From positions 124,001 through 188,000 of the IMG/VR virus record IMGVR_UViG_3300028883_000032: a DNA stretch of 64,000 nucleotides; one strand, given 5' to 3'. Position numbers and translations under genes: made by a program. This document shows, piece after piece, positions 7,444 to 35,768 of the stretch (position 1 is the stretch's first letter; each line of letters starts with the position of its first letter). Under the pieces are notes generated by a model. That model saw only the letters and a list, made by a program, of their open reading frames with translations, was not told where the DNA came from and did no database searches.

Positions 7444-7515
7444 TGGGGTGTAGCCAAGTGGTACGGCATCGGACTTTGAATCCGATATTCGTGGGTTCGA
7501 ATCCCACCACCCCAT
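7444..7515 (+). tRNA. tRNA-Gln(TTG), CCA not encoded
   Basis: Acceptor TGGGGTG/CACCCCA, anticodon arm TCGGA-CTTTGAA-TCCGA, T arm GTGGG-TTCGAAT-CCCAC. Confidence 0.93.
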
Positions 7516-20851: not shown

Positions 20852-21289
20852 GTGGAAAAAATAAATATCATTTTTGAGGACAATCTCACCGGGAATGAAT
20901 ATAAGTGCATTGCTTCAGAGTGCAACATTAGCCGCACTAAAGAAATATTTACAGACCACTTCGGAGAACACGAAGTATGTGTGCCAGGAAGGACGCTTAT
21001 ATCTGGCAAGATAACAGGTCTTACCAATTTACCAATGGACGGAGTTTTAAACAAATCATTTACATGTAATATAAACAACATTGTCCTCCACGACTTATCA
21101 ATTGTTGAAGTACGTGATGAGACGCGTCTTTATCCTTATGGGTATTCAAGGAACATTGAATTTGTTGCGTGTTCTATGGAAACTGTGGACCCAAAACCAG
21201 ACTCCAAACAAAAAATAAGTATAGATGCGCTCGTAGACCTGTTTAAAACCATAGGAGTATTTTACCATGATTCGGCAATTCCGGGGTAA
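20852..21289 (+). CDS. hypothetical protein (145 aa)
   Basis: ORF track. Confidence 0.55.
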   Translation: MEKINIIFEDNLTGNEYKCIASECNISRTKEIFTDHFGEHEVCVPGRTLISGKITGLTNLPMDGVLNKSFTCNINNIVLHDLSIVEVRDETRLYPYGYSRNIEFVACSMETVDPKPDSKQKISIDALVDLFKTIGVFYHDSAIPG

Positions 21290-21698
21290 ATACAGCCCCT
21301 TTTCAAACTTTTCGTTTCATACTGTTGCTCTTGAAAACATTGTTTTTCCTACAGGTGAACATGCTTTTCAATGTTATAAGGCAAAAACGGAAGATGGTTT
21401 TGATGCTGTGTTGGAGGCACCAACCCCAAGTAATGCAAAGCGCATAGCTCGCCAAATTGATATGCGTGACGACTGGGAAGAGGTAAAAGATGAAGTCATG
21501 TACAACGTCATTAAGGCAAAGGTAGAACAGCACCGAGATGTTAAGGAACTGTTACTTTCCACGGGAGACGAAGAAATACAAGAAGGAAATACTTGGGGAG
21601 ACGAATATTGGGGAGTCTCCTTACCGTCTGGCAGGGGCCGAAACCAACTTGGAAAAACGTGGATGCGGGTAAGAAGGGAGTTACAAAATGCCCAATAA
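21267..21698 (+). CDS. NADAR (YbiA/DUF1768) family hydrolase
   Basis: FSNF, FPTGEHAFQ..K, AKRIAR, DWEEVK..VM..VIKAK, LLSTG, E.N.WGD.YWG, GRNQLGK..M.VR. Confidence 0.9.
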   Translation: MIRQFRGKYSPFSNFSFHTVALENIVFPTGEHAFQCYKAKTEDGFDAVLEAPTPSNAKRIARQIDMRDDWEEVKDEVMYNVIKAKVEQHRDVKELLLSTGDEEIQEGNTWGDEYWGVSLPSGRGRNQLGKTWMRVRRELQNAQ

Positions 21699-22170
21699 AA
21701 TAACTTGCGCTACCTTCATAATACATGATGGTTCAGTGGGAAAAGAGGTGCTTCTTGTACAACCTACAGAAAAACCATTTTGGGAACCACCGAAGGGGAT
21801 TAAGGATGTTGGAGAAAATATAAATGATGCAGCCATGAGAGAAGTTTTTGAGGAAACCGGTATCCAACTTCAGCATGACGCATTAATCCATTTAGGAAGA
21901 TACCCGTATTTAGTGGGAAAGGATATAGCGTTTTTTATGGCTTGTGGCTATAACGAGCTATTAAGGGCGCAGGAAAGGGTATGTAGAAGCTACTTCTATA
22001 AATTTGGAGAAGGGTTCATACCGGAAATCCAAAATTCTGCATGGTTTCAACTTTCCCAAGTAAAGCATCTTGTCACGGCAAACATGTTAAAAGCCATGAA
22101 GTTAATGGCGGAAAGTGTAAAACATCAAAATGAGAAAATTAGTAAGTATACAGAGAGTTTGGTCAGTTGA
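21688..22170 (+). CDS. Nudix hydrolase
   Basis: PKG(X5)E(X5)AAMREVFEETGI Nudix box. Confidence 0.9.
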   Translation: MPNKITCATFIIHDGSVGKEVLLVQPTEKPFWEPPKGIKDVGENINDAAMREVFEETGIQLQHDALIHLGRYPYLVGKDIAFFMACGYNELLRAQERVCRSYFYKFGEGFIPEIQNSAWFQLSQVKHLVTANMLKAMKLMAESVKHQNEKISKYTESLVS

Positions 22171-22231
22171 ACCGATTGAGGGCTCTGACTTTATTGAAAA
22201 AATAAAAGTCCTTGGGTGGACTTTAGTGGCT
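22130..22231 (+). CDS. RNA ligase exon 1 (34 codons, MRKLVSIQRV...LGWTLVA)
   Basis: Hand-translated; matches the missing N-terminus of Rnl2/DRB0094-type RNA ligases and ends at the P1 U.G splice site. Confidence 0.88.
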
Positions 22232-22388
22232 TAATTCTGGGTCACTTTAAACTCGCTCAATTGCTGGAAAGCTAAACCGCAGCAAACACCGTGGTAGGCC
22301 GATCAGCAGCCAGAGGTTATGGCGACATAGTCAAATGGTTCAGAGACTTATCAAAGTACTTGGCAGAGGAAATGGTAGAATTGATAGA

Positions 22389-22664
22389 ATGAAAATGAAA
22401 ACTTATAAACTAAAAGTACAGATTTTTGATAGTAAAAATCGCCCAAAATCAGATTTAAAGACAATTGCAAAATTTGATTCTAAATATGTATTAGCAAAAT
22501 ATATTGACACTTATAGTAAAGTAAAAAGGCTGACTGTAAATACTGTTCACACCGCAGATGGTAGCAAAATAATAAAAGGCCCAAAGCTTTTATACTTTGA
22601 CGAAAATGATAATATACATGAGCTATCTATCGAAGTTCAGGAAGATGGTGGTTGTGATGTATAG
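22389..22664 (+). CDS. intron-internal hypothetical protein 1
   Basis: ORF 22335..22664; ATG 22389/22395 lies just past the intron core. Confidence 0.55.
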   Translation: MKMKTYKLKVQIFDSKNRPKSDLKTIAKFDSKYVLAKYIDTYSKVKRLTVNTVHTADGSKIIKGPKLLYFDENDNIHELSIEVQEDGGCDV

Positions 22665-22893
22665 TAAATTCATAGTTGTCTTGTTTAAAACAGAATATAG
22701 TTTTACTGTGCATGTTAACAAAGACTTTTTTACAGTTAGTTTTGAATGGGAATCTAAATATATTGATTGCTTCAAAGGGTATGACAATATTGTAGGGGTT
22801 GAATTAAATTTTAAGAACAGGTATTTCTCCGCATATTGTCATATAAAAAACAAAATTTATAGCTTCACTTTTCCCCAAAATAATGAGGAATAA
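22657..22893 (+). CDS. intron-internal hypothetical protein 2
   Basis: ORF 22597..22893; MYSKF start overlaps the previous stop. Confidence 0.5.
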   Translation: MYSKFIVVLFKTEYSFTVHVNKDFFTVSFEWESKYIDCFKGYDNIVGVELNFKNRYFSAYCHIKNKIYSFTFPQNNEE

Positions 22894-22895
22894 GA
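22887..22895 (+). promoter_or_regulatory. GGHATAAGA promoter-like motif inside the intron
   Basis: GGAATAAGA 30 nt upstream of ORF 22926. Confidence 0.5.
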
Positions 22896-22925
22896 TAGTA
22901 ACCATAAAACTAACTGGGGTAAAAC

Positions 22926-23354
22926 ATGGCAGAGGAACAGGTGTTTTCTAACATTGGTAGAAAATGTTTGTTGGTGATCATGGTAATACTGTGCGGTGTT
23001 CAATTCGTGTATTCCCAGGATGCCATTAAAGTATCCGAAGATCGCGGCATAACCGCAGTGCAGTGCCTGTTGGCGTATCATGGGTATTTTACGTTCGCAG
23101 AATATGCAACTGGCAAATACAACAAAGTCACCGATTTGGCACTTAAACTCCACCTAATAAAAAATGGCATTGATCCCCATGACGAGGTTATATGCCGGAG
23201 ATTTATATACCAATCTGTCATGAAATACAAAGAATTTGTTGATTCGTCGCTAGTATCGACAGCTTTTAAGAAAAGAGTTAACGAAAGTCTGCGAGGGGTT
23301 ACTCCTTTCAACATCATAAGTGAAGAGTCTATTTGGGTTCTTGAGGAGGATTAA
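22926..23354 (+). CDS. intron-internal hypothetical protein 3 (signal/TM segment)
   Basis: ORF track; hydrophobic N-terminal segment. Confidence 0.6.
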   Translation: MAEEQVFSNIGRKCLLVIMVILCGVQFVYSQDAIKVSEDRGITAVQCLLAYHGYFTFAEYATGKYNKVTDLALKLHLIKNGIDPHDEVICRRFIYQSVMKYKEFVDSSLVSTAFKKRVNESLRGVTPFNIISEESIWVLEED

Positions 23355-23535
23355 AGTGACTCTGGAAGAAAAGTTAAAGTCAGAGACTACGGGGATGCTT
23401 CAACAAATACTGTCTTCCATTAAATTCTGCATTCGAAACAACTTGTACTCTTGGATTTCTCCAGGGCCTTACGGGTGTCCCACCATGGAGGACTGGTACT
23501 TGGAAGTCGAAGCAGAAGTTAATCAGAGGGCCTAG
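23320..23535 (+). CDS. intron-internal hypothetical protein 4
   Basis: ORF track; likely GTG start 23356 after GAGGAGG. Confidence 0.5.
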   Translation: MKSLFGFLRRIKVTLEEKLKSETTGMLQQILSSIKFCIRNNLYSWISPGPYGCPTMEDWYLEVEAEVNQRA

Positions 23536-23557
23536 CCCTCTTTTAACCAAAAAAATC

Positions 23558-23854
23558 ATGAAAGTAAAGCACGAAACAATAATACCTATAGGTTCCCCAT
23601 TAGTGATGACAGGTTTGCATGAAATCACCGGAGGTCCTTGGGAATGCACAGAAGAAACATTTAACTCCGTTGCCCTGCAAATTATAAACAGACAACGCGA
23701 GAACTGCGGACTTGAATGTATTGACAAGCTTCCGGTATTAAGGGAAGTTGAAGATATTCAAAAGGCTATTATTCCTCATGTGGATAAAAGGTTATTATAT
23801 GAAGCTGACGGGTTAGTTGTCAGGTTTGATTTTGACTTGGGAAATTGGGAGTAG
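23558..23854 (+). CDS. intron-internal hypothetical protein 5
   Basis: ORF track; TTAACCAAAAAAATC leader. Confidence 0.55.
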   Translation: MKVKHETIIPIGSPLVMTGLHEITGGPWECTEETFNSVALQIINRQRENCGLECIDKLPVLREVEDIQKAIIPHVDKRLLYEADGLVVRFDFDLGNWE

Positions 23855-23886
23855 TTTCACTCATTTTTATTTAACCAAAAAAAGAA

Positions 23887-24267
23887 ATGGCAAAAAAAAT
23901 AAATACCGAGCCTAGAACCATAACCGTAAAATTAAAAGAAAGTGGAGAAACAGTCCACCATATTTTAGAGTGTGGCAGTATTGATGAGTCTATTGACTTT
24001 TTACAAGATATTAAAAATAAATATCCTGAAATGTTCAATATAAGAATAGAAATTGAAAGCGAACCTGATTATTATGACAATGTTTATCAATATGTTAATT
24101 TTTATGGATCTAGGCTAGAAACAGCAGACGAAGTTGCTAAAAGAATTGGAATTGAAGAAGAGGCTGCTCGAAAGATAAGAGACCAAAGAAAAGCTAAAAA
24201 GAAAAAAACTGAAGAAGAGCAGCGGGCACTGTATGAAAAACTAAAAGAAAAGTTTGGGGATAAATAA
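23887..24267 (+). CDS. intron-internal hypothetical protein 6
   Basis: ORF track; TTAACCAAAAAAAGAA leader; charged C-terminal helix. Confidence 0.65.
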   Translation: MAKKINTEPRTITVKLKESGETVHHILECGSIDESIDFLQDIKNKYPEMFNIRIEIESEPDYYDNVYQYVNFYGSRLETADEVAKRIGIEEEAARKIRDQRKAKKKKTEEEQRALYEKLKEKFGDK

Positions 24268-24458
24268 TGTCAATAGAAATAAGTGATATTGCATTAGATA
24301 TGATTATAGATAAGAAATTTGTTGGAAAAACATTAAAAGAAGTATTAAAAAGTACACCAAAATATGAACACGAACACTTCTTAAAACATCTTGAGTACGC
24401 AGAAGAAACAGTTAATAATTGGCCTGAGTGGAAAAAAATGCATATGATGCTACAGTAG
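24267..24458 (+). CDS. intron-internal hypothetical protein 7
   Basis: TAATG overlap with the previous ORF. Confidence 0.55.
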   Translation: MSIEISDIALDMIIDKKFVGKTLKEVLKSTPKYEHEHFLKHLEYAEETVNNWPEWKKMHMMLQ

Positions 24459-24589
24459 AAGAAAAAATATTTACGAAGAATAAATAATGGAAATTATCAA
24501 TTAACACGGCGAGCTCTCGGTAGGTGCTGCCACACTGGTGACCGAGATGAAGGTATAGTCCACGCCTGCATGAAAATGTAGGGTTAGTG

Positions 24590-25570
24590 AGGAAAGGGGA
24601 ATTCAAAAAAGGTGATTTGTGTGTCTATTGCGAAATAGATTCCATCTTACCAGAACGCGAAGAATTTGAATTCCTACGCAGCAAAAAGTTTAGAATAAAA
24701 ACACAGAAGATTCGTGGGATATTGAGTCAGGGAATAGCTTTTCCCATTTCAGTGTTGAATAAAGGAAAAAGCGAAGTAATCGTGGAACTGGTATCCAGTG
24801 ATGATTCCAAAGATCCAGACCCATATATACACGTAGATGACGATTCAGGCCATGGGTCGGGCTCCACTTTCTTCTTGGGTGACGACGTAACTGCGTATTT
24901 AGGGGTAAAAAAGTATGAAGTCCCTATACAGTTTAAACAAGGCCAGTCCGCGGGGAACTTCCCAGCTTTTATACATAAAACAGATGAGACCCGCATACAG
25001 ACCTGTATAGAATGCTTGGAGGAGCTACATGGTAAGCCGTATTACATAACCACAAAAGTAGATGGAACTTCAGGAACATTTTATAGGAAAGACGACCACT
25101 TTGGGGTATGCTCGAGGAATTTCGAGAAAAAAGAAGGACAAAGCGTGTATTGGGAAGTCGCAAAAAAATACGACCTCAAATCCAAGTTGGAGAACTACGG
25201 CAAGGACGTTGCTATACAAGGAGAACTTGCGGGGCCGGGAATTCAAAAGAACAGGCTTGGGTTGGAAAGCACATCATTGTTTGTATTCAACATACAGGAT
25301 ATTTCGAAAGGTTGCTTTTTATCCTTCAACGAGGTCAAAGACCTTTGTAATGCCCTAGGTATCAACATGGTTCCCATTCTAGAAGAAGGTGAACACTTCA
25401 ATTATACTTTTGAGCAACTTTTGGAATTAGCAGAACACAAGTACCTCAATGGGAGTCATGCCGAAGGTATTGTGATAAGACCACAAGTGGAAGAATATTC
25501 TCGTACCTTACACGGTAGGCTATCATTTAAAGTTATCAACAATAAGTTTCTGTTAAAAGGCGGGGATTAA
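24590..25570 (+). CDS. RNA ligase exon 2 (Rnl2/DRB0094 family; spliced product 360 aa)
   Basis: GDLCVYCEIDS, KVDGTS (motif I), QGELAGPGIQKN, FVFNI, EGIVIR, FKVINNKFLLK. Confidence 0.9.
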   Translation, partial: RKGEFKKGDLCVYCEIDSILPEREEFEFLRSKKFRIKTQKIRGILSQGIAFPISVLNKGKSEVIVELVSSDDSKDPDPYIHVDDDSGHGSGSTFFLGDDVTAYLGVKKYEVPIQFKQGQSAGNFPAFIHKTDETRIQTCIECLEELHGKPYYITTKVDGTSGTFYRKDDHFGVCSRNFEKKEGQSVYWEVAKKYDLKSKLENYGKDVAIQGELAGPGIQKNRLGLESTSLFVFNIQDISKGCFLSFNEVKDLCNALGINMVPILEEGEHFNYTFEQLLELAEHKYLNGSHAEGIVIRPQVEEYSRTLHGRLSFKVINNKFLLKGGD

Positions 25571-25700: not shown

Positions 25701-26048
25701 ATGTCGCAATATGTATATTTTATAGAAGCGACAGGACTTAATCGAGTTAAAATAGGCTATGCTACAAATCCAACAAAACGAATAAAGGACCTTGATACCG
25801 GAAGTGCGGTAAATTTGGAGTTGTTGGGAGTTGTTCCCGGCTCTTTGGCCAAGGAGCGCCAACTTCACCAAAAGTTCGCGCAGTATCGCATTAAAGGAGA
25901 ATGGTTCAATTATAGCGACGAAATAAAGGATTACGTAAAAGAGAATACTTCGTTAGAGTTGCAACAGCCTAAAAAACCGCAGACATTTAATAAAGCTAAT
26001 GCTGACATGTTTAAGGCGCTTGTAGCCTTGAGGATTCTCTCATCGTAG
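25701..26048 (+). CDS. T5orf172/MUG113 (GIY-YIG superfamily) domain protein
   Basis: VYFI....NRVKIGYA.NP.KRI..L.TG, ERQLH.KF..YRI.GEWF. Confidence 0.85.
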   Translation: MSQYVYFIEATGLNRVKIGYATNPTKRIKDLDTGSAVNLELLGVVPGSLAKERQLHQKFAQYRIKGEWFNYSDEIKDYVKENTSLELQQPKKPQTFNKANADMFKALVALRILSS

Positions 26049-26803: not shown

Positions 26804-27166
26804 GGGCTCGACTGGAATCGACGGGTGGATATTGAGAATTGGTTGCGTTACTAGTCCTGTCAAGGACGATAATCCATGACAATCGATAACTGGCGAAACT
26901 CCAGTCCTTAAGGCTGCCTAATCCTTCGGGATTATGCACATAAAAGCCACGTTGACCGAATCCGATTCCCGTTAGGGTTCGAATCAACGTCGAAAATACG
27001 GGATGCTGTCTTACAGGCCTCGCTATAAGACATAAGATTTAGAGGATGGGTAGGGGTGATGAAAGTCTGGTGCCTGATCCCCGCCGAGATGAAATATCCA
27101 GACTAGGTAACGTAGACGCTAATTCTTGAGCCTCTCCGGACCCGGGTTCGAATCCCGGCGAGTCCA
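26804..27166 (+). ncRNA. ssrA: tmRNA, tag (A)GETPVLKAA*, CCA not encoded
   Basis: 5' GGGCTCGACTGGAATCGACGGG; 3' CCGGGTTCGAATCCCGG-CGAGTCC-A; G3.U pair; ATAACT-GGC resume context; tag ORF 26892-26921. Confidence 0.93.
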
Positions 27167-27168
27167 CT

Positions 27169-27196
27169 AAGCCACTATTATTAGTGGCTTTTTTTT
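27169..27196 (+). terminator. intrinsic terminator after tmRNA
   Basis: AAGCCACTA-TTAT-TAGTGGCTT plus T6. Confidence 0.85.
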
Positions 27197-29614: not shown

Positions 29615-29629
29615 CAGGTAGCTTTTTTT
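29604..29629. terminator. terminator at the convergence of the NYN gene and the RNAP gene
   Basis: AGCTACC-TTAACA-GGTAGCT plus T6. Confidence 0.7.
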
Positions 29630-32600
29630 ACCAGAATACTCCCTTTTCAGGATCAAACTGTGTAGCAAACTCGTTTGCATATAAGTATGCTGGCATGGGG
29701 TCATAGCCGTGTATATTTGTTTTGCTTGCTTTTGCTGCAGAGTCTTGAATAACCATTTTGATGTTATTACTAGTAACACGGCTTAACCAGTCGTCCCGTT
29801 CATGTGGTAAAACATTTATACTCTTGAAATAAGGTTTATATTCTATTTGTGGAAGCCCTTCTGCTTTTCTCTCTTTATTTTCCTTATCAACTACAGTTTT
29901 AAAAACTGTATCCCCCTTTATAAACCTTGAGTTATCTGGAGCATTTGTAATATAAGCGTTATCGCTTATACCCCTGATTATAGTTTCGAATGTACGCTTG
30001 TGGAATTTTCCGTCGTAAACGTTATCCATCCTATCCACAAGAGATTTTTGAGCAGTAATGAAGTCTGTTAATTCCGCTAATTCTTGCGGTTTTTTTGTAC
30101 CAGTACTTATAGGTTCTCCACGAGTAACTATATCGTCTATTTTAACCAGCAAGTCTCTTCCTGGTTTTACGTGGTGAAGTTTTGGACTATTACCATCTCC
30201 CATAATGGCAACTTCCCAACCTCCCGCCATTCCGGGTTTTATATTTATTACCCTACCTTCTATTTGTGCAAGTTCCGCTTTTCCTGGTAAAATTGCCGGG
30301 ACCTTTACAGTACGCTCTAATTCTGGGAATCCCGCTGTCACTCCTCCACCGGCTAGAGCGCTTCCCCCAGAGTGGAAAGTTTGCATGGTCAATTGTGTTG
30401 CTCTTTCAGATACAGCCTGTCCGTCTAAAACTCCAGCATTATAACCAATTTGTGGCAATTTTCCTTCAGGGGTTAGCCCATAACAAAAAGCACACATACC
30501 TCGTTCTGTTTCACAAGTTAGAGGGCTTCTAACCTTTATTAAACTGTTACCCAGTTTTTTAACCAAGTCAGGGTGGATTAAAGCCGTAATAGTATCCCCT
30601 ACTTCTACCACTCCCGGCACTCTTTGCTGGCTTATACGCCCTATAACGTTTTTGTCACTAGCAGATAACTCTATTCCATTTGTTGTACCACAATCTTGTT
30701 CGGTTATAAGCACGTCCTTCAGATTAGTTAAAAGCGCCTTATTTAAGGCACCAGTATCTTGTGTGTTTACGGCGCGATCAACGGTGCCTTTTCTTGCAGA
30801 ATACATGTGGTTCCAGAATGAAAAGTCGTCTACTCCCTCTGCCCAGGATTTTTCAACAGGAGTGGGGATTGGGCGCCCCTTAACATCCAAAAGAACCCCA
30901 GGCATGGTTAGTACTTGCCTAATACTGTCTGGTTTTCCCTGTGATCCAGAATCAAGCATGTGGAAAAACCTATTATCGCTTTTACGCGCATTTTCATATA
31001 ATTCTTTTTGAACTTTCTTGGAAGCTTCGTTATATATTTCAGCACGTTCCAGTGGAGTTTGGACACGGTTTGCTTTTTTGTGAGCAATTTCCATAATAGG
31101 ACCACGAGCACTACGGTCCATATCCAAGTCCGTTATACTCAAAGTTATAGGTTTACGATAAGAGTATTCTTTTCCAAGCTCTTTAAAGTGGTTCATCACC
31201 TCAGCAAACTTTTTAGGATGCCTATCGCTTATTTCCTTCATTATACGCTTAACCGTGTCAGCATCAAATACTAATGTTCTGTCTTTTAAGTCCTCCGGAA
31301 GCTTTTCTAAAACAAGCTCCTTACCGTAAGTTGTACGCCCTACTCCTGTTAATTCAACTTCCTCCGCTTCGTCAAGTTTGCCGTCTCTAACATCATCAGC
31401 CATTTTTTTGAATGTGCTATATTTTTTGCCATCATATTTTCTATCCACTTTTGTAAGATACCAAAGACCTTGTTGAAATATTTGACTAAATGAGCCAATG
31501 ATGGGCATAACAGGATCATCAAAATGGGGCCCATGTTGATAAATGTTTTTAGAAGGAATCATGCCAAACGCTTCACGAACGGCATCAGTGGATACAGGCA
31601 CATTAACTGACATGGCGTCACCGTCAAAGTCCGCATTAAAACCCTTAACAATAAGAGGATTTAATTTAATAGCTTGGCCATCAATGCGCTTTGGTATTGC
31701 AGCTTGTACACTATGTTTATGTAACGATGGAGCACGATTAAGTAGTACTGGTCTGTTCTCCATGGCCAAGTCTATTCCACGCAGGCCAAGTTCTGTTTCT
31801 TCTTGAATTTCCTTACGTGCAGTCAGGGGACTGTGACCACGTTTGGTCAGCTCCTGTACGGCAAATGGAAGATAAATTTCTTTTGCCATTCCTGTGGGAA
31901 TTCCTACCTCGTCTACTCCCAAGTTTGGATCAAGTGTAATGGTGCTGCGAGCAGAAAGATCCTGTCGTTTGCTCCAGACATTACTTTGTATAAAACCTTC
32001 TTTAGGTTCGGACCCAGATAGTGTGCGTAAGGCCCCCTCGTATTTTTCTTTCCCAAAGTGGGTTAGTTCTGTTAATCCCTGTAACTCCTTAAAATGATCG
32101 TAAAGCGACTTACGCACTTCATCAACTTTTATTTTCTCTGTGCCAATTTCCTTATCGCTAGCTAGGCCATCGTTAAGTTTCGATATGTCCCTATAATGAT
32201 AATTAATTGGACTTACCATTAAATCACCGGAAGGTAATGGGTAAACTGGCCTAAATACTGGAGGCATGACTGGAATTTTATTTGTGGTATAGGCTTCTTC
32301 CGCTGTCATTCCTAGTTTATCTAGAGCTTCTAAGTATCGTACGCGCTTATTAAGTTTATTTACGCGTGACTCCGGTGCGGTTTTTAATTCATTTTTTGAT
32401 TCCTGTAATTCTTTTTTTACATCTATAGCACGTAGGTCAGTAATTATTTTATCTATTCCACCCTCTTCCCCTTTAAGGCGCGCCTCATACTGAGGGCGGG
32501 TAATACCAAGCAATGATTGGATTGCTTTTTCATACATTGGAGAAGGCATGGTATCAGTTAATTCTATGTGGCTCCATTTTGTACCTCCATGTCCTCCGGT

Positions 32601-35600
32601 AATTTTTGAGTCAAACAACCCGCCTTTTAAAGTTGCTAAATTTTTACCCATTAGCATTTGTCCGGCATCGTCTAATTTACCGGCACTAATTTCAGATATT
32701 TTTTTATCCGTCAAAGGCATTAACTGAATTTCATTACCCTTTTTTTCACTATCAACCCCGGCGGCCTTCATGTAGGCTACCATTTTATCAAATACAAAAG
32801 ATTTTTGGGGAGTTGGTAGTGGCAAACCTAATTGTATTGCTCTCCACAGCTCATCATTCTTTTGTGATTTTATAGCAGTGAAATCTCTTAAATTGTGTTT
32901 TGCACCATGCGCTAGGAGAACATATGTTTGCATAGGATCGACGGATTGTCCCCCAGACTCTCCTCTACCGGGAGCCTCATTTACATTGTAGGAACCATAA
33001 CTACGGCTTTTTTCTTTATGTTCAACCACATGCATTAGTTTTAGTATGTACTGAGGACCAGTAAATACTTTCGATTTAAGAGGCTTACCGTCTTTGCCAT
33101 CTAATACCACCTCGTCAGGTTCAATTCCTTGTTTTTTAAGTTCGTTAAGGAGTATGTTTAATTTGTCCTTACCATCGAAATTACGAATGACGTAAGGTTT
33201 ACCTGTTTTTTCAGCAATTTTAGCCGCTGCTGTTTCTAACAATTGTGAGGGATTCATTCTAGAAGGTATTCCAAACGGAGACATTATCATGTCTACACGC
33301 TTACCACTAGCGGTATGTGGAGCCTCCTCGTCAGGTATGATCTTAACAACAATCCCTTTACCACCGTATCTGTTGGCTAGTTTGTCTCCCTCCACTAATG
33401 GGTGACTTACTTTCACACGAACTACAATTTTACGGCCCATTTTAGAAACATACATTACTTCCCCGGGCTCATCAAAATCATATACAACACTCCGGTCGTC
33501 ATATAATTTAGACACCTTACGGTTCATATTCTTTAGTATTCTCTGTTCGTCGGTCATTTCTCTTGGTTCAAGGTGTGCTATGAGTACATCACCCTTTTTA
33601 ACTCTTTCACCTTCTTTTATAATTCCTTCCGAATCAAGTTTATTATAACTTCCAGTATTTATAAAGGCACCTGGATATTCAGCGGCAAGCTTATCCTTAT
33701 TAAAAATACCATTAGTGGTTCTATGCGAAGTATAATTGTGCAGACTAGAATGTGTAAACTTTTTAGCAAACGAATCTGTTACCACCAACCCGTCTTCAAA
33801 TGAATAGCCCTTGTAAGGCATATAAGCTACTTGGACATTTGCGCCAAGACCTAATGTCTTTTTTCCACCAAAAGGTGGCTCAGCTTCAAAGTTATTTTTT
33901 GCTAATTCTTGTTTGGCCTTAACTACATCACCCGGTTTAACAGTAGGAGTACTGTGCAAGAACGACTCTTGGTTCATTGGAAAATAGTTATACAGCCCTA
34001 TTTTAAGGCTTTTTGACTCCCCTTCAGGTTTTATATGAATGTAGTCAGGTGTTACTTTAGTTACAACACCTGATTTAATGTCGTCGGGAACATATGGATT
34101 AAGATAGTCACCAATCGACTCATCAAAACTTTTATCGATTAATGGCCGACCAACTTGTACTAGAGGAGCTTCCCCATTATCAATGGTAAAAGCTTGTGAA
34201 GTGTTTTTAGCAGCCATTAGTGCCCTGTTTCCTTGGGTATGTTCTAAAAATGGCGTTAAGTTTGTTGGCCACCCAAACAGAGATTGAGGTTTAATGATGT
34301 AGCCATCAACATCTTTATGGGCAAAAACTTCTGCTTTTCCCTTATTATATCCCCGTATTACCCTTTTTGTAAAGTCCCCGTCATGTGGTATTGGTTTTCC
34401 ATTTTTTAAGACATACTGCTCACCAAAACCAACTCTCATGTTCCACAACTCATGCGGAGAGACGTACTTAATATCACCGTCTTTCATAATTACGGGAGTT
34501 GTCATCTGTCCTTTACTGTTTTTTTCAACAAACAGACTCAAAGGAAGAGAAATCCCCACTTTGGAACTATCCGGAGTTTGTACAGGATCAAGAAATCCAA
34601 TATGAGACGGATGGACGTTACGGGTTTCCATGGTTACCTCATGCATGGAAGGTATTCCTCCCGTACCTAATACTGAAGTTTTTCTCCATTCTGATAATAT
34701 TGAGACTGGGTTCGTTTGAGGAGGTGTCGCACTAAGGTCACTTGTAGTAAAGAAACTTTTTATGGGCTTACTATAAGTATCTGGACTTATAATATCCCTA
34801 ATCTGATCCTTTCTGTCCGTACGGAAACGTAAATTACCTGTAATTTGTTTGTCCTTTTTTTCAAGAAAGAACCCGAGTAGATCATCCACAGTCATGAGGG
34901 ACTTAAATACTAGCGAGTCACGCTCATCAGGATCTGCATCACCGCGTTGGACAGCCAGTAACTTTTTACTAACATCCATTAACGTATCTTTATTAACTTT
35001 TTTGTGTGATGCACCCAAAGTTATCAGTGTTGTATCTGGGTCGACTGCGGTTGTCTCAAAGTACTCATATAACATCTTTTTTGCTTCTTGTGGGGTTTTT
35101 GGTTTTTGATGTAAAACCTTTTCCACAAGGTTGACCCACATATCGGGCTCTTCTCCTTTATCGCTATTTTTGGCATAAAGGTCCTTGCCCCACAACTCAA
35201 GCATTTCTTGGTCTGTTACACCCAACGCCTTAAGAATGTTGTACAGTCTATAATTTTGATTCCCAGCACGCAATAGAAAAATTCCTTTTGTCGGGTCTAA
35301 AGTAAGTTTAAAATTAAAACCCTTTGCAAGATTAAATTGGGATTCAAAGTCACCATTATCTTTCATGCGTGTATATATACCAGACTTAAGGCGCAACTGA
35401 TTTGTTGTTTGGTATTCATTGCCGTCAATAATAGCACTAAATCTTTGTGTTTGTTTAGGTATATTGGCTATTTTTATTTTAGGTTTTTCATCAACAATGT
35501 CCCCTGTTTTTTTGTCGACAAGTCTTAAATGTCCGTAAACTGGAACAGACCAAGTACTACCACTAACTTTGGCTTTCTTTTGGGCTGGAAGATCGTTTGT

Positions 35601-35768
35601 GGGGGCGTCCTCGTCCCCTATGTCCAAACTAATCAATTCCAATTTTTTATTTTGTGCATCAATGGGGTATTGATTGGATATAAAATTACCAATTACATCA
35701 TAAATTTTAGAATTTTGAACATTAGGATTTAATGAGTCTTTTAATTCTCTGTCTGCATTCCTCATCAT
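29628..35768 (-). CDS. rpoBC: fused beta-beta' multisubunit DNA-directed RNA polymerase (2046 aa)
   Basis: beta motifs HPSHIGFLDPVQTPD, GDKLANRYGGKG, PFGIPSRMN, YILKLMH; beta' motifs HIEL, PVMPPVFRP, LLNRAPSLH, NADFDGD, ARKG, TQLTMQTFHSGG. Confidence 0.95.
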   Translation of the reverse strand: MMRNADRELKDSLNPNVQNSKIYDVIGNFISNQYPIDAQNKKLELISLDIGDEDAPTNDLPAQKKAKVSGSTWSVPVYGHLRLVDKKTGDIVDEKPKIKIANIPKQTQRFSAIIDGNEYQTTNQLRLKSGIYTRMKDNGDFESQFNLAKGFNFKLTLDPTKGIFLLRAGNQNYRLYNILKALGVTDQEMLELWGKDLYAKNSDKGEEPDMWVNLVEKVLHQKPKTPQEAKKMLYEYFETTAVDPDTTLITLGASHKKVNKDTLMDVSKKLLAVQRGDADPDERDSLVFKSLMTVDDLLGFFLEKKDKQITGNLRFRTDRKDQIRDIISPDTYSKPIKSFFTTSDLSATPPQTNPVSILSEWRKTSVLGTGGIPSMHEVTMETRNVHPSHIGFLDPVQTPDSSKVGISLPLSLFVEKNSKGQMTTPVIMKDGDIKYVSPHELWNMRVGFGEQYVLKNGKPIPHDGDFTKRVIRGYNKGKAEVFAHKDVDGYIIKPQSLFGWPTNLTPFLEHTQGNRALMAAKNTSQAFTIDNGEAPLVQVGRPLIDKSFDESIGDYLNPYVPDDIKSGVVTKVTPDYIHIKPEGESKSLKIGLYNYFPMNQESFLHSTPTVKPGDVVKAKQELAKNNFEAEPPFGGKKTLGLGANVQVAYMPYKGYSFEDGLVVTDSFAKKFTHSSLHNYTSHRTTNGIFNKDKLAAEYPGAFINTGSYNKLDSEGIIKEGERVKKGDVLIAHLEPREMTDEQRILKNMNRKVSKLYDDRSVVYDFDEPGEVMYVSKMGRKIVVRVKVSHPLVEGDKLANRYGGKGIVVKIIPDEEAPHTASGKRVDMIMSPFGIPSRMNPSQLLETAAAKIAEKTGKPYVIRNFDGKDKLNILLNELKKQGIEPDEVVLDGKDGKPLKSKVFTGPQYILKLMHVVEHKEKSRSYGSYNVNEAPGRGESGGQSVDPMQTYVLLAHGAKHNLRDFTAIKSQKNDELWRAIQLGLPLPTPQKSFVFDKMVAYMKAAGVDSEKKGNEIQLMPLTDKKISEISAGKLDDAGQMLMGKNLATLKGGLFDSKITGGHGGTKWSHIELTDTMPSPMYEKAIQSLLGITRPQYEARLKGEEGGIDKIITDLRAIDVKKELQESKNELKTAPESRVNKLNKRVRYLEALDKLGMTAEEAYTTNKIPVMPPVFRPVYPLPSGDLMVSPINYHYRDISKLNDGLASDKEIGTEKIKVDEVRKSLYDHFKELQGLTELTHFGKEKYEGALRTLSGSEPKEGFIQSNVWSKRQDLSARSTITLDPNLGVDEVGIPTGMAKEIYLPFAVQELTKRGHSPLTARKEIQEETELGLRGIDLAMENRPVLLNRAPSLHKHSVQAAIPKRIDGQAIKLNPLIVKGFNADFDGDAMSVNVPVSTDAVREAFGMIPSKNIYQHGPHFDDPVMPIIGSFSQIFQQGLWYLTKVDRKYDGKKYSTFKKMADDVRDGKLDEAEEVELTGVGRTTYGKELVLEKLPEDLKDRTLVFDADTVKRIMKEISDRHPKKFAEVMNHFKELGKEYSYRKPITLSITDLDMDRSARGPIMEIAHKKANRVQTPLERAEIYNEASKKVQKELYENARKSDNRFFHMLDSGSQGKPDSIRQVLTMPGVLLDVKGRPIPTPVEKSWAEGVDDFSFWNHMYSARKGTVDRAVNTQDTGALNKALLTNLKDVLITEQDCGTTNGIELSASDKNVIGRISQQRVPGVVEVGDTITALIHPDLVKKLGNSLIKVRSPLTCETERGMCAFCYGLTPEGKLPQIGYNAGVLDGQAVSERATQLTMQTFHSGGSALAGGGVTAGFPELERTVKVPAILPGKAELAQIEGRVINIKPGMAGGWEVAIMGDGNSPKLHHVKPGRDLLVKIDDIVTRGEPISTGTKKPQELAELTDFITAQKSLVDRMDNVYDGKFHKRTFETIIRGISDNAYITNAPDNSRFIKGDTVFKTVVDKENKERKAEGLPQIEYKPYFKSINVLPHERDDWLSRVTSNNIKMVIQDSAAKASKTNIHGYDPMPAYLYANEFATQFDPEKGVFW

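What the first reader, a model, noticed from the sequence alone, without database searches (positions are those of the whole stretch)
22130..25570. RNA ligase gene split by a 2.36-kb group I intron carrying seven non-endonuclease ORFs
Seen: a 34-codon exon (22130-22231) supplies the N-terminus missing from ORF 24587. Joining 22231 to 24590 gives GWTLVA-RKGEF in frame (360 aa). A full core is readable: P1 with the U.G splice pair, P10 TTCT/AGGA, and P3, P4, P6, P7, P8, P9 and terminal G. The core is cut between P7 and P3' by ~2.1 kb, closed by an 8-bp stem AATTGATA (22379-86)/TATCAATT (24495-502). The insert holds seven ORFs with no GIY-YIG, HNH or LAGLIDADG motif. Established: phage group I introns usually carry none or one homing endonuclease in a peripheral loop. 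Inference: the intron acts as a neutral landing site for multi-gene cargo, and RNA repair capacity becomes splicing-dependent.
Basis: partly seen in the sequence, partly recalled or inferred. Interest (0 to 1): 0.8.

Follow-up and report, generated by a model that had tools for sequence, protein, structure and literature searches.

The report
Phage intron carrying seven extra genes
A phage RNA-ligase gene is split by a real self-splicing (group I) intron whose usual "endonuclease slot" holds about 2.1 kb with seven small ordinary phage genes instead, a size not seen in about 200 related introns; splicing itself is still untested.

Summary
ORF 22130-22231 and ORF 24590-25567 are the two halves of one RNA ligase of the DRB0094/TIGR02306 type. 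Pfam's OB-fold model matches positions 1-30 in the first piece and 32-92 in the second, and every homologue checked is continuous across the join.

The 2,358 nt between them (22232-24589) is a group I intron with P7.1/P7.2 (IA-like). Rfam RF00028 hits both halves separately. A 3'-half covariance model built only from relatives hits the window once, at 24497-24591 (84 bits, E 2e-18).

Its nearest relatives are introns in phage rtcB genes such as that of Bacillus phage CM1. There the P7.2 loop is short or holds one HNH-like ORF of about 160 aa. Here the same loop, closed by 22379-86/24495-502, holds 2,108 nt with seven co-oriented ORFs.

- The ORFs cover 94% of the insert.
- No homing-endonuclease signature was found in any of them.
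- One ORF (23887-24264) belongs to a widespread uncharacterised phage protein family.

Among about 200 related introns none exceeds about 950 nt in this interval.

The core is not "cut", because the insert sits in a normal peripheral loop. Splicing, cargo expression and the "landing site" idea remain untested, since no RNA data exist. Verdict: a new variant of a known kind.

The parts
22130..22231 (+). Exon 1 of the RNA ligase: 34 codons, the first third of the N-terminal OB-fold. It ends in U22231, the 5' splice site.
   Evidence: PF21189 positions 1-30/92 (E 3e-6) and phrog_968 positions 7-39. Homologues are continuous here.
22232..24589 (+). Group I intron, 2,358 nt. It starts with an in-frame TAA and ends with G24589 (omega-G).
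22232..22386 (+). 5' half of the ribozyme: P1 loop and internal guide (22240-46), P10 strand (22235-38), P3 5' strand (22252-57), P4-P5-P5a-P6-P6a (22262-22339), J6/7 and P7 5' strand (GGUUCAGAGACU, 22337-48), a weak P7.1 (22349-78) and the P7.2 5' strand (22379-86).
   Evidence: RF00028 at 22259-22351, 20.1 bits, E 0.0025. blastn 75% identity to the Proteus phage PM135 DNA-polymerase intron and 73% to the Bacillus phage CM1 rtcB intron. Fold.
22387..24494 (+). Cargo insert, 2,108 nt, in the terminal loop of P7.2. GC is 34%, with a mosaic of 27-29%, 40-46% and 29-32%.
   Evidence: The position is homologous to the HNH-like ORF of CM1 and relatives.
22389..22664 (+). Cargo ORF c1, 91 aa from ATG 22389. 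The frame is open back to ATG 22335 inside the core, and the public gene call used that start (109 aa). No homologues found.
   Evidence: Best of six frames with the window's codon model. No homologue. No family hit.
22657..22893 (+). Cargo ORF c2, 78 aa. It overlaps the end of c1 by 8 nt.
   Evidence: No family hit.
22926..23354 (+). Cargo ORF c3, 142 aa, with a hydrophobic N-terminal segment. No homologues found. Its codon match to the rest of the genome is weak.
23356..23535 (+). Cargo ORF c4, 59 aa from GTG 23356 with GAGGAGG 7 nt upstream (71 aa from GTG 23320). A hairpin GAGGGC-CUA-GCCCUC followed by UUUU lies at 23527-45 and overlaps the end of c4 (stop codon 23533-35).
   Evidence: The hairpin did not pass the terminator scan.
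23558..23854 (+). Cargo ORF c5, 98 aa. An exact 14-nt direct repeat, TTTAACCAAAAAAA, stands before its start (23542-55) and before the c6 start (23870-83).
23887..24267 (+). Cargo ORF c6, 126 aa. It belongs to a widespread family of about 115-aa uncharacterised phage proteins, with a beta-alpha-alpha-beta-beta domain and a long C-terminal helix.
   Evidence: 121 cluster representatives at E<=1e-3, including the query's own. Conserved motifs YYD...YG.RLETD.E..KR...LK.KYG. A free-standing copy sits in a phage-like contig, L134. AF2 pLDDT 92.8. It matches only uncharacterised phage proteins and no nuclease fold.
24267..24458 (+). Cargo ORF c7, 63 aa. Its start overlaps the c6 stop by 1 nt.
   Evidence: Weak hit to phrog_38465, E 3.5e-4. 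Best frame.
24495..24589 (+). 3' half of the ribozyme: P7.2 3' strand (24495-502), P3 3' strand (24508-13), P8 (24515-19/24543-47) with inner stem P8a (24523-26/24533-36), J8/7 and P7 3' strand (GAAGGUAUAGUCC; AGUC at 24557-60), P9 (24565-71/24576-82, GAAA loop) and omega-G24589.
   Evidence: RF00028 at 24495-24582, 18.8 bits, E 0.0042. Model R1, built without the window, hits 24497-24591 at 84.1 bits, E 2e-18, with no non-canonical pair. That is within the range of true clade members, 80-102 bits.
24590..25570 (+). Exon 2 of the RNA ligase: 326 codons plus stop. It holds the rest of the OB-fold and the nucleotidyltransferase domain, with all invariant residues kept.
   Evidence: PF21189 positions 32-92 and PF09414 (E 5e-30). 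TIGR02306 141 bits. Residues of the KxDG, QGE and EGIVxR motifs and K315 are invariant columns.
25701..26048 (+). Neighbouring gene, outside the intron: 115-aa MUG113/T5orf172 protein of the GIY-YIG type. It is a candidate free-standing endonuclease that could mobilise the endonuclease-less intron in trans. This link is an inference only.
   Evidence: PF13455 E 1.4e-12 and PF10544 E 4.7e-9. T5orf172 is described as a GIY-YIG subfamily of phage homing endonucleases in PMC10448857.

Best explanation
The 2,358 nt between the two ligase pieces is a group I intron of the IA-like type, with P7.1 and P7.2. It belongs to a clade otherwise found in phage rtcB genes.

Inferred history:
- It has moved into a DRB0094-type RNA ligase gene of a 207-kb phage from marine sediment.
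- Its internal guide sequence now matches the new exon.
- In relatives the P7.2 loop is short or holds one HNH-like homing-endonuclease gene. Here that loop holds seven small co-oriented phage genes and no recognisable endonuclease.

Inferred working:
- The gene array is transcribed through the intron.
- P7.2 (22379-86/24495-502), P3 and P7 pair across 2.1 kb to assemble the core.
- Guanosine attacks after U22231, and exon ligation after G24589 gives a 360-codon ligase mRNA.
- The cargo is translated from the precursor or from the excised intron.

Shown: the intron's identity, its anatomy, the location of the insert, the rarity of that size, and intact exons. Not shown: splicing, cargo expression and how the cargo arrived.
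For: Split gene:
- The Pfam and PHROG profiles are colinear across the join.
- All 11 IMG/VR homologues and all 119 other database homologues listed are continuous there.

Intron identity:
- RF00028 hits both halves.
- The 5' half matches introns of phages PM135 and CM1.
- The independent 3'-half model R1 gives 84 bits, E 2e-18, as a single hit, which is as good as true clade members.
- P8, P8a and P9 covary in the clade.
- P3 and P7.2 covary across clade members, and the window fits. Examples for P3: CUCGCU/GGCGAG here, CUCACU/GGUGAG, CCUGCU/GGCAGG and UCCGCU/GGCGGA in relatives.
- The guide GGUCACU pairs with the ligase exon AGUGGCU. Relatives' guides pair with the rtcB exon instead.

Insert site and size:
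- The insert site equals the ORF site of CM1 and others.
- Measuring the P7 to P7' interval, the largest other values were about 950 nt among 124 introns sharing the core motif and among about 90 further subfamily members from viral and metagenome contigs, and 685 nt among 23 members from genomes. The window's value is 2,213 nt.

Cargo and exons:
- The ORFs tile 94% of the insert, against a simulated maximum of 57%.
- Each cargo ORF scores best in its own frame.
- c6 has a real protein family.
- All invariant residues of the ligase are kept.
Against: - There is no RNA evidence. No RNA run could be listed, and the only DNA run is probably the source sample.
- P7.1 is weak here, at about 4 bp.
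- A hairpin plus UUUU lies inside the cargo at 23527-45, and the 2.1-kb translated loop could hinder transcription through the intron or its folding.
- The c1 start codon lies 3 nt after the P7.2 5' strand, so translation and folding may compete.
- Five of the seven cargo ORFs have no homologue, and c3 and c4 fit the genome's codon usage poorly.
- This is a single occurrence in one metagenome.
Confidence: 0.7

Rival explanations
1. Dead intron. The ribozyme was disabled by the 2.1-kb insertion, or transcription stops inside the cargo. On this reading the ligase is a recently inactivated pseudogene and the seven ORFs are just ordinary genes lying between two gene remnants.
For: There are no splicing data. 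P7.1 is weak, and there is an internal hairpin plus U-run at 23527-45. No relative tolerates more than about 950 nt in this interval.
Against: Both exons are open and keep every invariant catalytic residue. All core pairs are canonical, and the 3' half scores like working relatives. The guide sequence matches the present exon, which argues for selection for splicing at this site. The closing stem P7.2 is a perfect 8 bp.
Confidence: 0.2
2. One of the seven unassigned ORFs is a homing endonuclease of an unrecognised or very divergent family. On this reading the element is a conventional mobile intron plus passengers.
For: Five ORFs have no detectable relatives, so their function is open. New endonuclease families have been found in phage introns before (PMC3239194, listed).
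Against: No nuclease motif or family hit appeared in four libraries. There is no similarity to the relatives' intron ORFs. The ORFs are short, 59-142 aa. The one well-modelled protein, c6, has no nuclease fold.
Confidence: 0.07
3. There is no intron function at all. This could be a gene fission with exon 2 translated on its own from GTG 24587, or an assembly chimera that joined unrelated DNA.
For: An ORF does start at GTG 24587. The sequence comes from a metagenome.
Against: The break falls in the middle of the OB-fold domain. A ribozyme of a defined clade flanks the insert in the correct order and orientation. An independent assembly of the run gives the whole 4-kb stretch in one 73-kb contig with no differences, even depth and no alternative joints.
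Confidence: 0.03

Closest known systems
Group I introns in phage rtcB genes (Bacillus phage CM1, LC785692, and about 25 metagenomic and genomic relatives)
   Same: They belong to the same ribozyme clade. The 3' half is 74% identical to CM1, and model R1 scores the window within the clade's range. They share P7.1 and P7.2, the same AACACGG(C/U)GAG junction, an in-frame stop just inside the intron, and an ORF insertion site in the P7.2 loop.
   Different: The host gene differs: rtcB there, an ATP-dependent DRB0094-type ligase here. The guide sequence differs accordingly. Their P7.2 loop is short or holds one ORF of 155-167 aa with a C..C...CxxCH..H pattern, which looks HNH-like by eye and has no Pfam hit. 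Here the loop holds 2,108 nt with seven ORFs and no such protein.
Classical phage group I introns (T4 td, nrdB, nrdD; PM135 DNA-polymerase intron with a LAGLIDADG ORF)
   Same: These are self-splicing introns in phage protein-coding genes, with ORFs looped out of peripheral helices and a stop codon soon after the 5' splice site (review PMC3984707).
   Different: They carry none or one homing-endonuclease gene and are about 0.2-1 kb long. The T4 nrdB intron has a defunct endonuclease and is mobilised in trans by mobE (PMC2790892). That could parallel the T5orf172 neighbour here, but this was not tested.
IStrons (group I intron fused to an IS200/IS605-type insertion sequence; PMC4227781)
   Same: A bacterial group I ribozyme of about 2 kb or more that carries non-homing-endonuclease ORFs, so that the insertion is made harmless by splicing.
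   Different: In IStrons the cargo consists of transposase genes (PMC4227781). From memory, not read in the paper here, the IS is attached at the 3' end of the ribozyme. In the window there is no transposase hit, and the cargo sits inside the P7.2 loop.
Fungal mitochondrial large-subunit rRNA group I intron that encodes ribosomal protein rps3 (from memory, not checked here)
   Same: A group I intron that houses a non-endonuclease gene.
   Different: That case is a single gene in an organelle and has a long-established host function. It is not a seven-gene block in a phage.

Membership tests
Group I intron (Rfam RF00028) | Conserved catalytic core: P3-P4-P6 and P7-P8-P9 with consensus J6/7, J8/7 and P7 sequences. 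| tested here: met
   RF00028 hits the two halves at 20.1 and 18.8 bits. Each is below the 50-bit gathering score because the model is split. Clade model R1 gives 84.1 bits. The helices are listed and read.
Group I intron (Rfam RF00028) | U.G pair at the 5' splice site in P1, formed with an internal guide sequence, and a terminal G at the 3' splice site. | tested here: met
   U22231.G22240 lies within the 7-bp P1 AGUGGCU/GGUCACU. G24589 precedes exon 2. P10 is UUCU/AGGA.
Group I intron (Rfam RF00028) | Removal restores an uninterrupted host reading frame. | tested here: met
   The join is colinear with Pfam and PHROG profiles and with about 130 homologues.
Group I intron (Rfam RF00028) | Guanosine-dependent self-splicing. 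| not testable with these tools
   No RNA run could be listed. This needs in vitro transcription or RT-PCR.
Subgroup IA-like (P7.1/P7.2 between P7 and P3') | Two extra hairpins between the P7 5' strand and the P3 3' strand. | tested here: met
   P7.2 is a perfect 8 bp and covaries across the clade. P7.1 is present but only about 4 bp here, against 5 or more in relatives. Assignment to IA1, IA2 or IA3 was not attempted.
Mobile group I intron (intron plus homing endonuclease gene) | An intron-encoded LAGLIDADG, GIY-YIG, HNH, His-Cys, PD-(D/E)xK or EDxHD endonuclease. | tested here: not met
   No hit in Pfam, PHROGs, NCBIfam or PADLOC. tblastn with the CM1 and PM135 intron ORFs found nothing below E 1.9. 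A divergent enzyme cannot be excluded for the ORFs without homologues.
IStron | An IS200/IS605-type transposase (TnpA/TnpB) linked to the ribozyme. | tested here: not met
   No transposase family hit in the intron.
RNA ligase, DRB0094/TIGR02306 family (N-terminal OB-fold plus nucleotidyltransferase) | PF21189 OB-fold followed by PF09414, with the KxDG lysine and motifs III, IV and V. | tested here: met
   TIGR02306 scores 141.4 bits on exon 2 alone against a cut-off of 151.15, so it falls just short without the 34 residues of exon 1.

The most novel reading that the evidence does not exclude
The intron is a working vehicle for accessory genes. The endonuclease slot (the P7.2 loop) has become a splicing-protected site where small phage genes accumulate. 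The whole 2.4-kb unit is then copied into intron-less ligase alleles of co-infecting phages by a trans-acting endonuclease, for example the adjacent T5orf172 protein. Ligase production may also be tied to translation of the cargo, because ribosomes starting at c1 sit on the P7.2 and P7.1 strands.
Probability: 0.15. Interest if true: 0.8.

Novelty: new variant of a known kind. Interest (0 to 1): 0.6.

Why it matters
Phage group I introns are regarded as carriers of at most one selfish endonuclease gene. This one would show that the looped-out slot can hold a multi-gene block of ordinary phage genes without destroying the host gene. That would add introns to the places where phage accessory genes can accumulate and perhaps spread by homing.

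It also gives a practical test case for how long and how heavily translated a peripheral loop can be before a ribozyme fails to fold.

For annotation, generic intron models miss such split introns entirely. Similar cases are therefore probably under-counted, with the host genes mis-called as truncated.

Tried and rejected
- **Rfam with the insert in place.** Scanning the whole region or the whole window found no intron. Only the separated halves match.
- **RNA evidence.** No RNA run could be listed. The single DNA run, probably the source sample, shows one allele only, with no cargo-less or intron-less form.
- **Intron-less or cargo-less alleles in close relatives.** The best ligase homologue is 52% identical, and all are continuous.
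  - P0157 looked split at the same site, but it is only a mis-called start; its gene is continuous.
- **Relic of the ancestral endonuclease in the cargo.** None found.
- **Paralogues of the cargo ORFs elsewhere in the window.** None.
- **Defence or anti-defence assignment of the cargo.** None.
- **Language-model and structure look-alikes for c1 and c5.** Only sub-threshold leads.
- **L266, an apparent 1,769-nt relative.** This is a chance pattern match inside a 798-aa bacterial ORF.
- **Truncated ligase genes in L004 and L011-L013.** No intron was detected.
- **A tRNA-like stretch inside another intron (L078).** Not confirmed.
- **TTTAACCAAAAAAA as a general promoter-like motif.** It occurs exactly only at the two cargo sites.
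- **Literature.** The searches run here (five) turned up no report of a multi-gene, endonuclease-free cargo in a phage group I intron. This is absence within the held library, not proof.

Full report
**The split gene.** ORF 22130-22231 encodes MRKLVSIQRVWSVEPIEGSDFIEKIKVLGWTLVA and is followed at once by TAA. ORF 24587-25570 encodes 327 aa.
- Pfam's PHA02142 OB-fold model (PF21189, 92 positions) matches positions 1-30 in the short ORF and 32-92 at the start of the long one.
- The long ORF continues into PF09414 RNA_ligase, E 5e-30.
- PHROG 968 (RNA ligase) is split the same way, 7-39 and 41-393.
- NCBIfam places exon 2 in TIGR02306, the DRB0094 family.
- Eleven IMG/VR homologues and the 119 best database homologues listed (the 120th row is the window's own protein) are all continuous across this point.
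- One apparent exception, P0157, is a mis-called start.
- Homologue P0201 reads KVLGWTLVASKGDF where the window reads KVLGWTLVA|RKGEF.
- Exon 2 keeps every invariant residue of the alignment, in the KxDG, QGE and EGIVxR motifs and at K315.

**The intron.** With the insert in place Rfam finds nothing. Searched separately, both halves match RF00028:
- 22259-22351 matches model positions 57-150 (20.1 bits, E 0.0025).
- 24495-24582 matches model positions 169-253 (18.8 bits, E 0.0042).

The 5' half is 73-75% identical to unannotated gaps in two phage genes. One splits the DNA polymerase of Proteus phage PM135 and the other splits RtcB of Bacillus phage CM1. Rfam also scores both gaps as group I. 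The 3' half is 74% identical to CM1's.

I built a covariance model of the 3' half from 24 relatives, without the window. P8, an inner stem P8a and P9 are all supported by compensatory changes.
- The model hits the 64-kb window once, at 24497-24591, with 84.1 bits, E 2e-18, full length and no non-canonical pair.
- Training sequences score 80-102 bits.
- Clade members that were not used score 87-101 bits.
- Other branches of the subfamily score 25-41 bits.

**Anatomy.** These were read and folded:
- P1 is AGUGGCU (22225-31) with GGUCACU (22240-46), including U22231.G22240.
- P10 is 22235-38 with 24590-93.
- P3 is CUCGCU (22252-57) with GGCGAG (24508-13).
- P4, P5, P5a, P6 and P6a span 22262-22339.
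- P7 is GACU (22345-48) with AGUC (24557-60).
- P7.1 (22349-78) is weak.
- P7.2 is AAUUGAUA (22379-86) with UAUCAAUU (24495-502).
- P8 is 24515-19 with 24543-47.
- P9 is 24565-71 with 24576-82, with a GAAA loop.
- The terminal G is G24589.

P3 and P7.2 bridge the two halves, and both covary across the clade. P3 variants seen are CUCACU/GGUGAG, CCUGCU/GGCAGG, UCCGCU/GGCGGA, CCCGCU/GGCGGG and CACGCU/GGCGUG. P7.2 differs in nearly every member yet stays paired.

The relatives sit in rtcB, and their guide sequences pair with the rtcB exon. The window's guide pairs with the ligase exon. I take this as a sign that the ribozyme has adapted to the new site.

**Where the insert is.** In compact clade members the P7.2 hairpin is a short stem-loop followed by AACACGG(C/U)GAG. 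In CM1 and several others the loop holds about 500 nt with one ORF of 155-167 aa. That ORF has a zinc-finger-plus-CxxCH..H pattern; it looks HNH-like by eye, and Pfam gives no hit. The window's 2,108-nt insert is in exactly this loop.

**How unusual the size is.** I measured the distance from the P7 5' strand to the P7 3' strand in three sets.
- *124 IMG/VR introns sharing GCAGCCA...GGTTCAGAGACT:* 93 are at most 150 nt, 6 are 150-377 nt, 24 are 500-940 nt, and the window alone is 2,213 nt.
- *The narrower subfamily (CTCAATTG...AATGGTTCAGAGACT):* 91 distinct members from viral and metagenome contigs could be measured. All but two are at most 953 nt. The two are the window itself and L266 (1,769 nt), which is a chance match inside a bacterial ORF.
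- *Species-representative genomes:* 23 members, maximum 685 nt.

The measure does not see inserts in other loops, and it needs exact motif matches.

**The cargo.** Seven + strand ORFs tile the insert with overlaps or gaps of at most 32 nt. They are 22389-22664, 22657-22893, 22926-23354, 23356-23535, 23558-23854, 23887-24267 and 24267-24458.
- ORFs of at least 55 codons cover 94% of the strand. In 2,000 first-order Markov simulations the mean was 16% and the maximum 57%.
- With a codon model trained on 25 long ORFs elsewhere in the window, each cargo ORF scores best in its own frame.
- c3 and c4 score low, at 0.04-0.05 bits per codon against 0.22 +/- 0.04 for the training set. One antisense shadow ORF scores higher than c3.
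- GC content is mosaic: 27-29%, then 40-46%, then 29-32%. An exact 14-nt repeat precedes both c5 and c6. This is compatible with piecemeal acquisition.
- c6 is a member of a real family:
  - 121 cluster representatives at E<=1e-3 (including c6 itself), of similar length and with conserved motifs.
  - One is a free-standing gene in a phage-like contig.
  - A confident model (pLDDT 92.8) resembles only uncharacterised proteins of large phages and no nuclease.
- c7 has a weak PHROG hit.
- c1 and c3 have no homologues in 5.8 billion proteins.
- No endonuclease, transposase or defence family was detected, and there is no relic of the relatives' intron ORFs.

**Context.** The window is part of IMGVR_UViG_3300028883_000032 (206,856 bp), from marine sediment.
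- The locus lies in a long co-directional array of small genes.
- NADAR and NUDIX genes lie upstream, and the NUDIX gene overlaps the ligase start.
- A T5orf172/MUG113 gene, a GP88-family gene and a tmRNA gene lie downstream.
- T5orf172 proteins are described as GIY-YIG-type free-standing homing endonucleases of phages (PMC10448857). This one is only 115 aa, and no DNA-binding domain was detected.
- An independent assembly of the only run that holds the sequence reproduces the 4-kb stretch without differences or alternative joints.

**Interpretation.** The best-supported reading is a splicing-competent group I intron whose endonuclease slot now holds a seven-gene block.
- Splicing is inferred from intact exons, an intact and clade-typical core, and a guide sequence matched to the present exon.
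- The main rival is a recently disabled intron.
  - It is favoured by the lack of RNA data, the weak P7.1, an internal hairpin plus U-run, and the fact that no relative carries so large a loop.
- How the genes arrived is unknown, as is whether the unit is mobile. Replacement of an HNH gene, successive insertions, and recombination near the P7.1-like 19-mer at 22924-42 are all open.

**Literature.** The held literature describes phage introns with none or one endonuclease gene, trans-mobilised defunct ones, and IStrons that carry transposases. I found no report of a multi-gene, endonuclease-free cargo.

Noticed in passing
window 26804-27169 (+): A full-length tmRNA gene (RF00023, 111.8 bits) lies 1.2 kb downstream of the ligase. 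Three tRNA genes are at 7444, 10303 and 17017. The phage carries its own translation-rescue RNA next to an RNA-repair gene.
   Followed up: no
window 25701-26048 (+): A 115-aa MUG113/T5orf172 (GIY-YIG-type) protein is encoded directly after the ligase terminator. It may be a free-standing homing endonuclease next to an endonuclease-less intron, reminiscent of mobE and the T4 nrdB intron.
   Followed up: partly
window 21267-22170 (+): NADAR (21267-21698) and NUDIX (21688-22170) genes lie immediately upstream, and the NUDIX gene overlaps the ligase start by 41 nt. Together with the ligase and the tmRNA this looks like a nucleic-acid repair or counter-defence cluster.
   Followed up: no
L002, L172, L212, L201 and about 20 other loci: The window's nearest intron relatives all interrupt rtcB, an unrelated RNA ligase, at one site (...GUCGGGGUU|). 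The same intron clade thus sits in two unrelated RNA-ligase genes.
   Followed up: partly
window 23542-23555 and 23870-23883: An exact 14-nt direct repeat, TTTAACCAAAAAAA, lies just upstream of the c5 and c6 start codons and so brackets c5. No other exact copy exists in the 64-kb window.
   Followed up: partly
window 22358-22376 versus 22924-22942: The P7.1 loop sequence ACTTGGCAGAGGAAATGGT recurs at 84% identity at the start of c3 (ACATGGCAGAGGAACAGGT). This may be chance or a recombination scar.
   Followed up: no
window 22335-22664: The c1 reading frame is open back to the ATG inside the conserved J6/7 sequence (AAAUGGUUCAGAGACU). The public gene call uses that start (109 aa). In CM1 the same frame closes quickly, so this is probably coincidence.
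   Followed up: partly
window 24770-24870 (ligase residues about 60-95 of exon 2): The ligase has a stretch of roughly 30 acidic and glycine-rich residues (…SSDDSKDPDPYIHVDDDSGHGSGS…) between the OB-fold and the catalytic domain. Most homologues lack it.
   Followed up: no
window 29628-35768 (-): There is a 2,046-aa ORF on the opposite strand, where the co-directional gene array ends.
   Followed up: no
L060, L069, L077, L078, L109: Another group I branch (GAGACUAACAGUUGAAACU...AGAAUAUAAUACUGACACGAG) carries variable inserts of 100-130 nt between P7 and P3'. In L078 the insert has a tRNA T-arm-like stretch, but ARAGORN finds no tRNA there.
   Followed up: partly
L299 and L308: Clade members with a roughly 500-nt P7.2 insert occur in contigs binned to Candidatus Electronema aureum and to an archaeon MAG. 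These may be prophage or mis-binned viral contigs.
   Followed up: no
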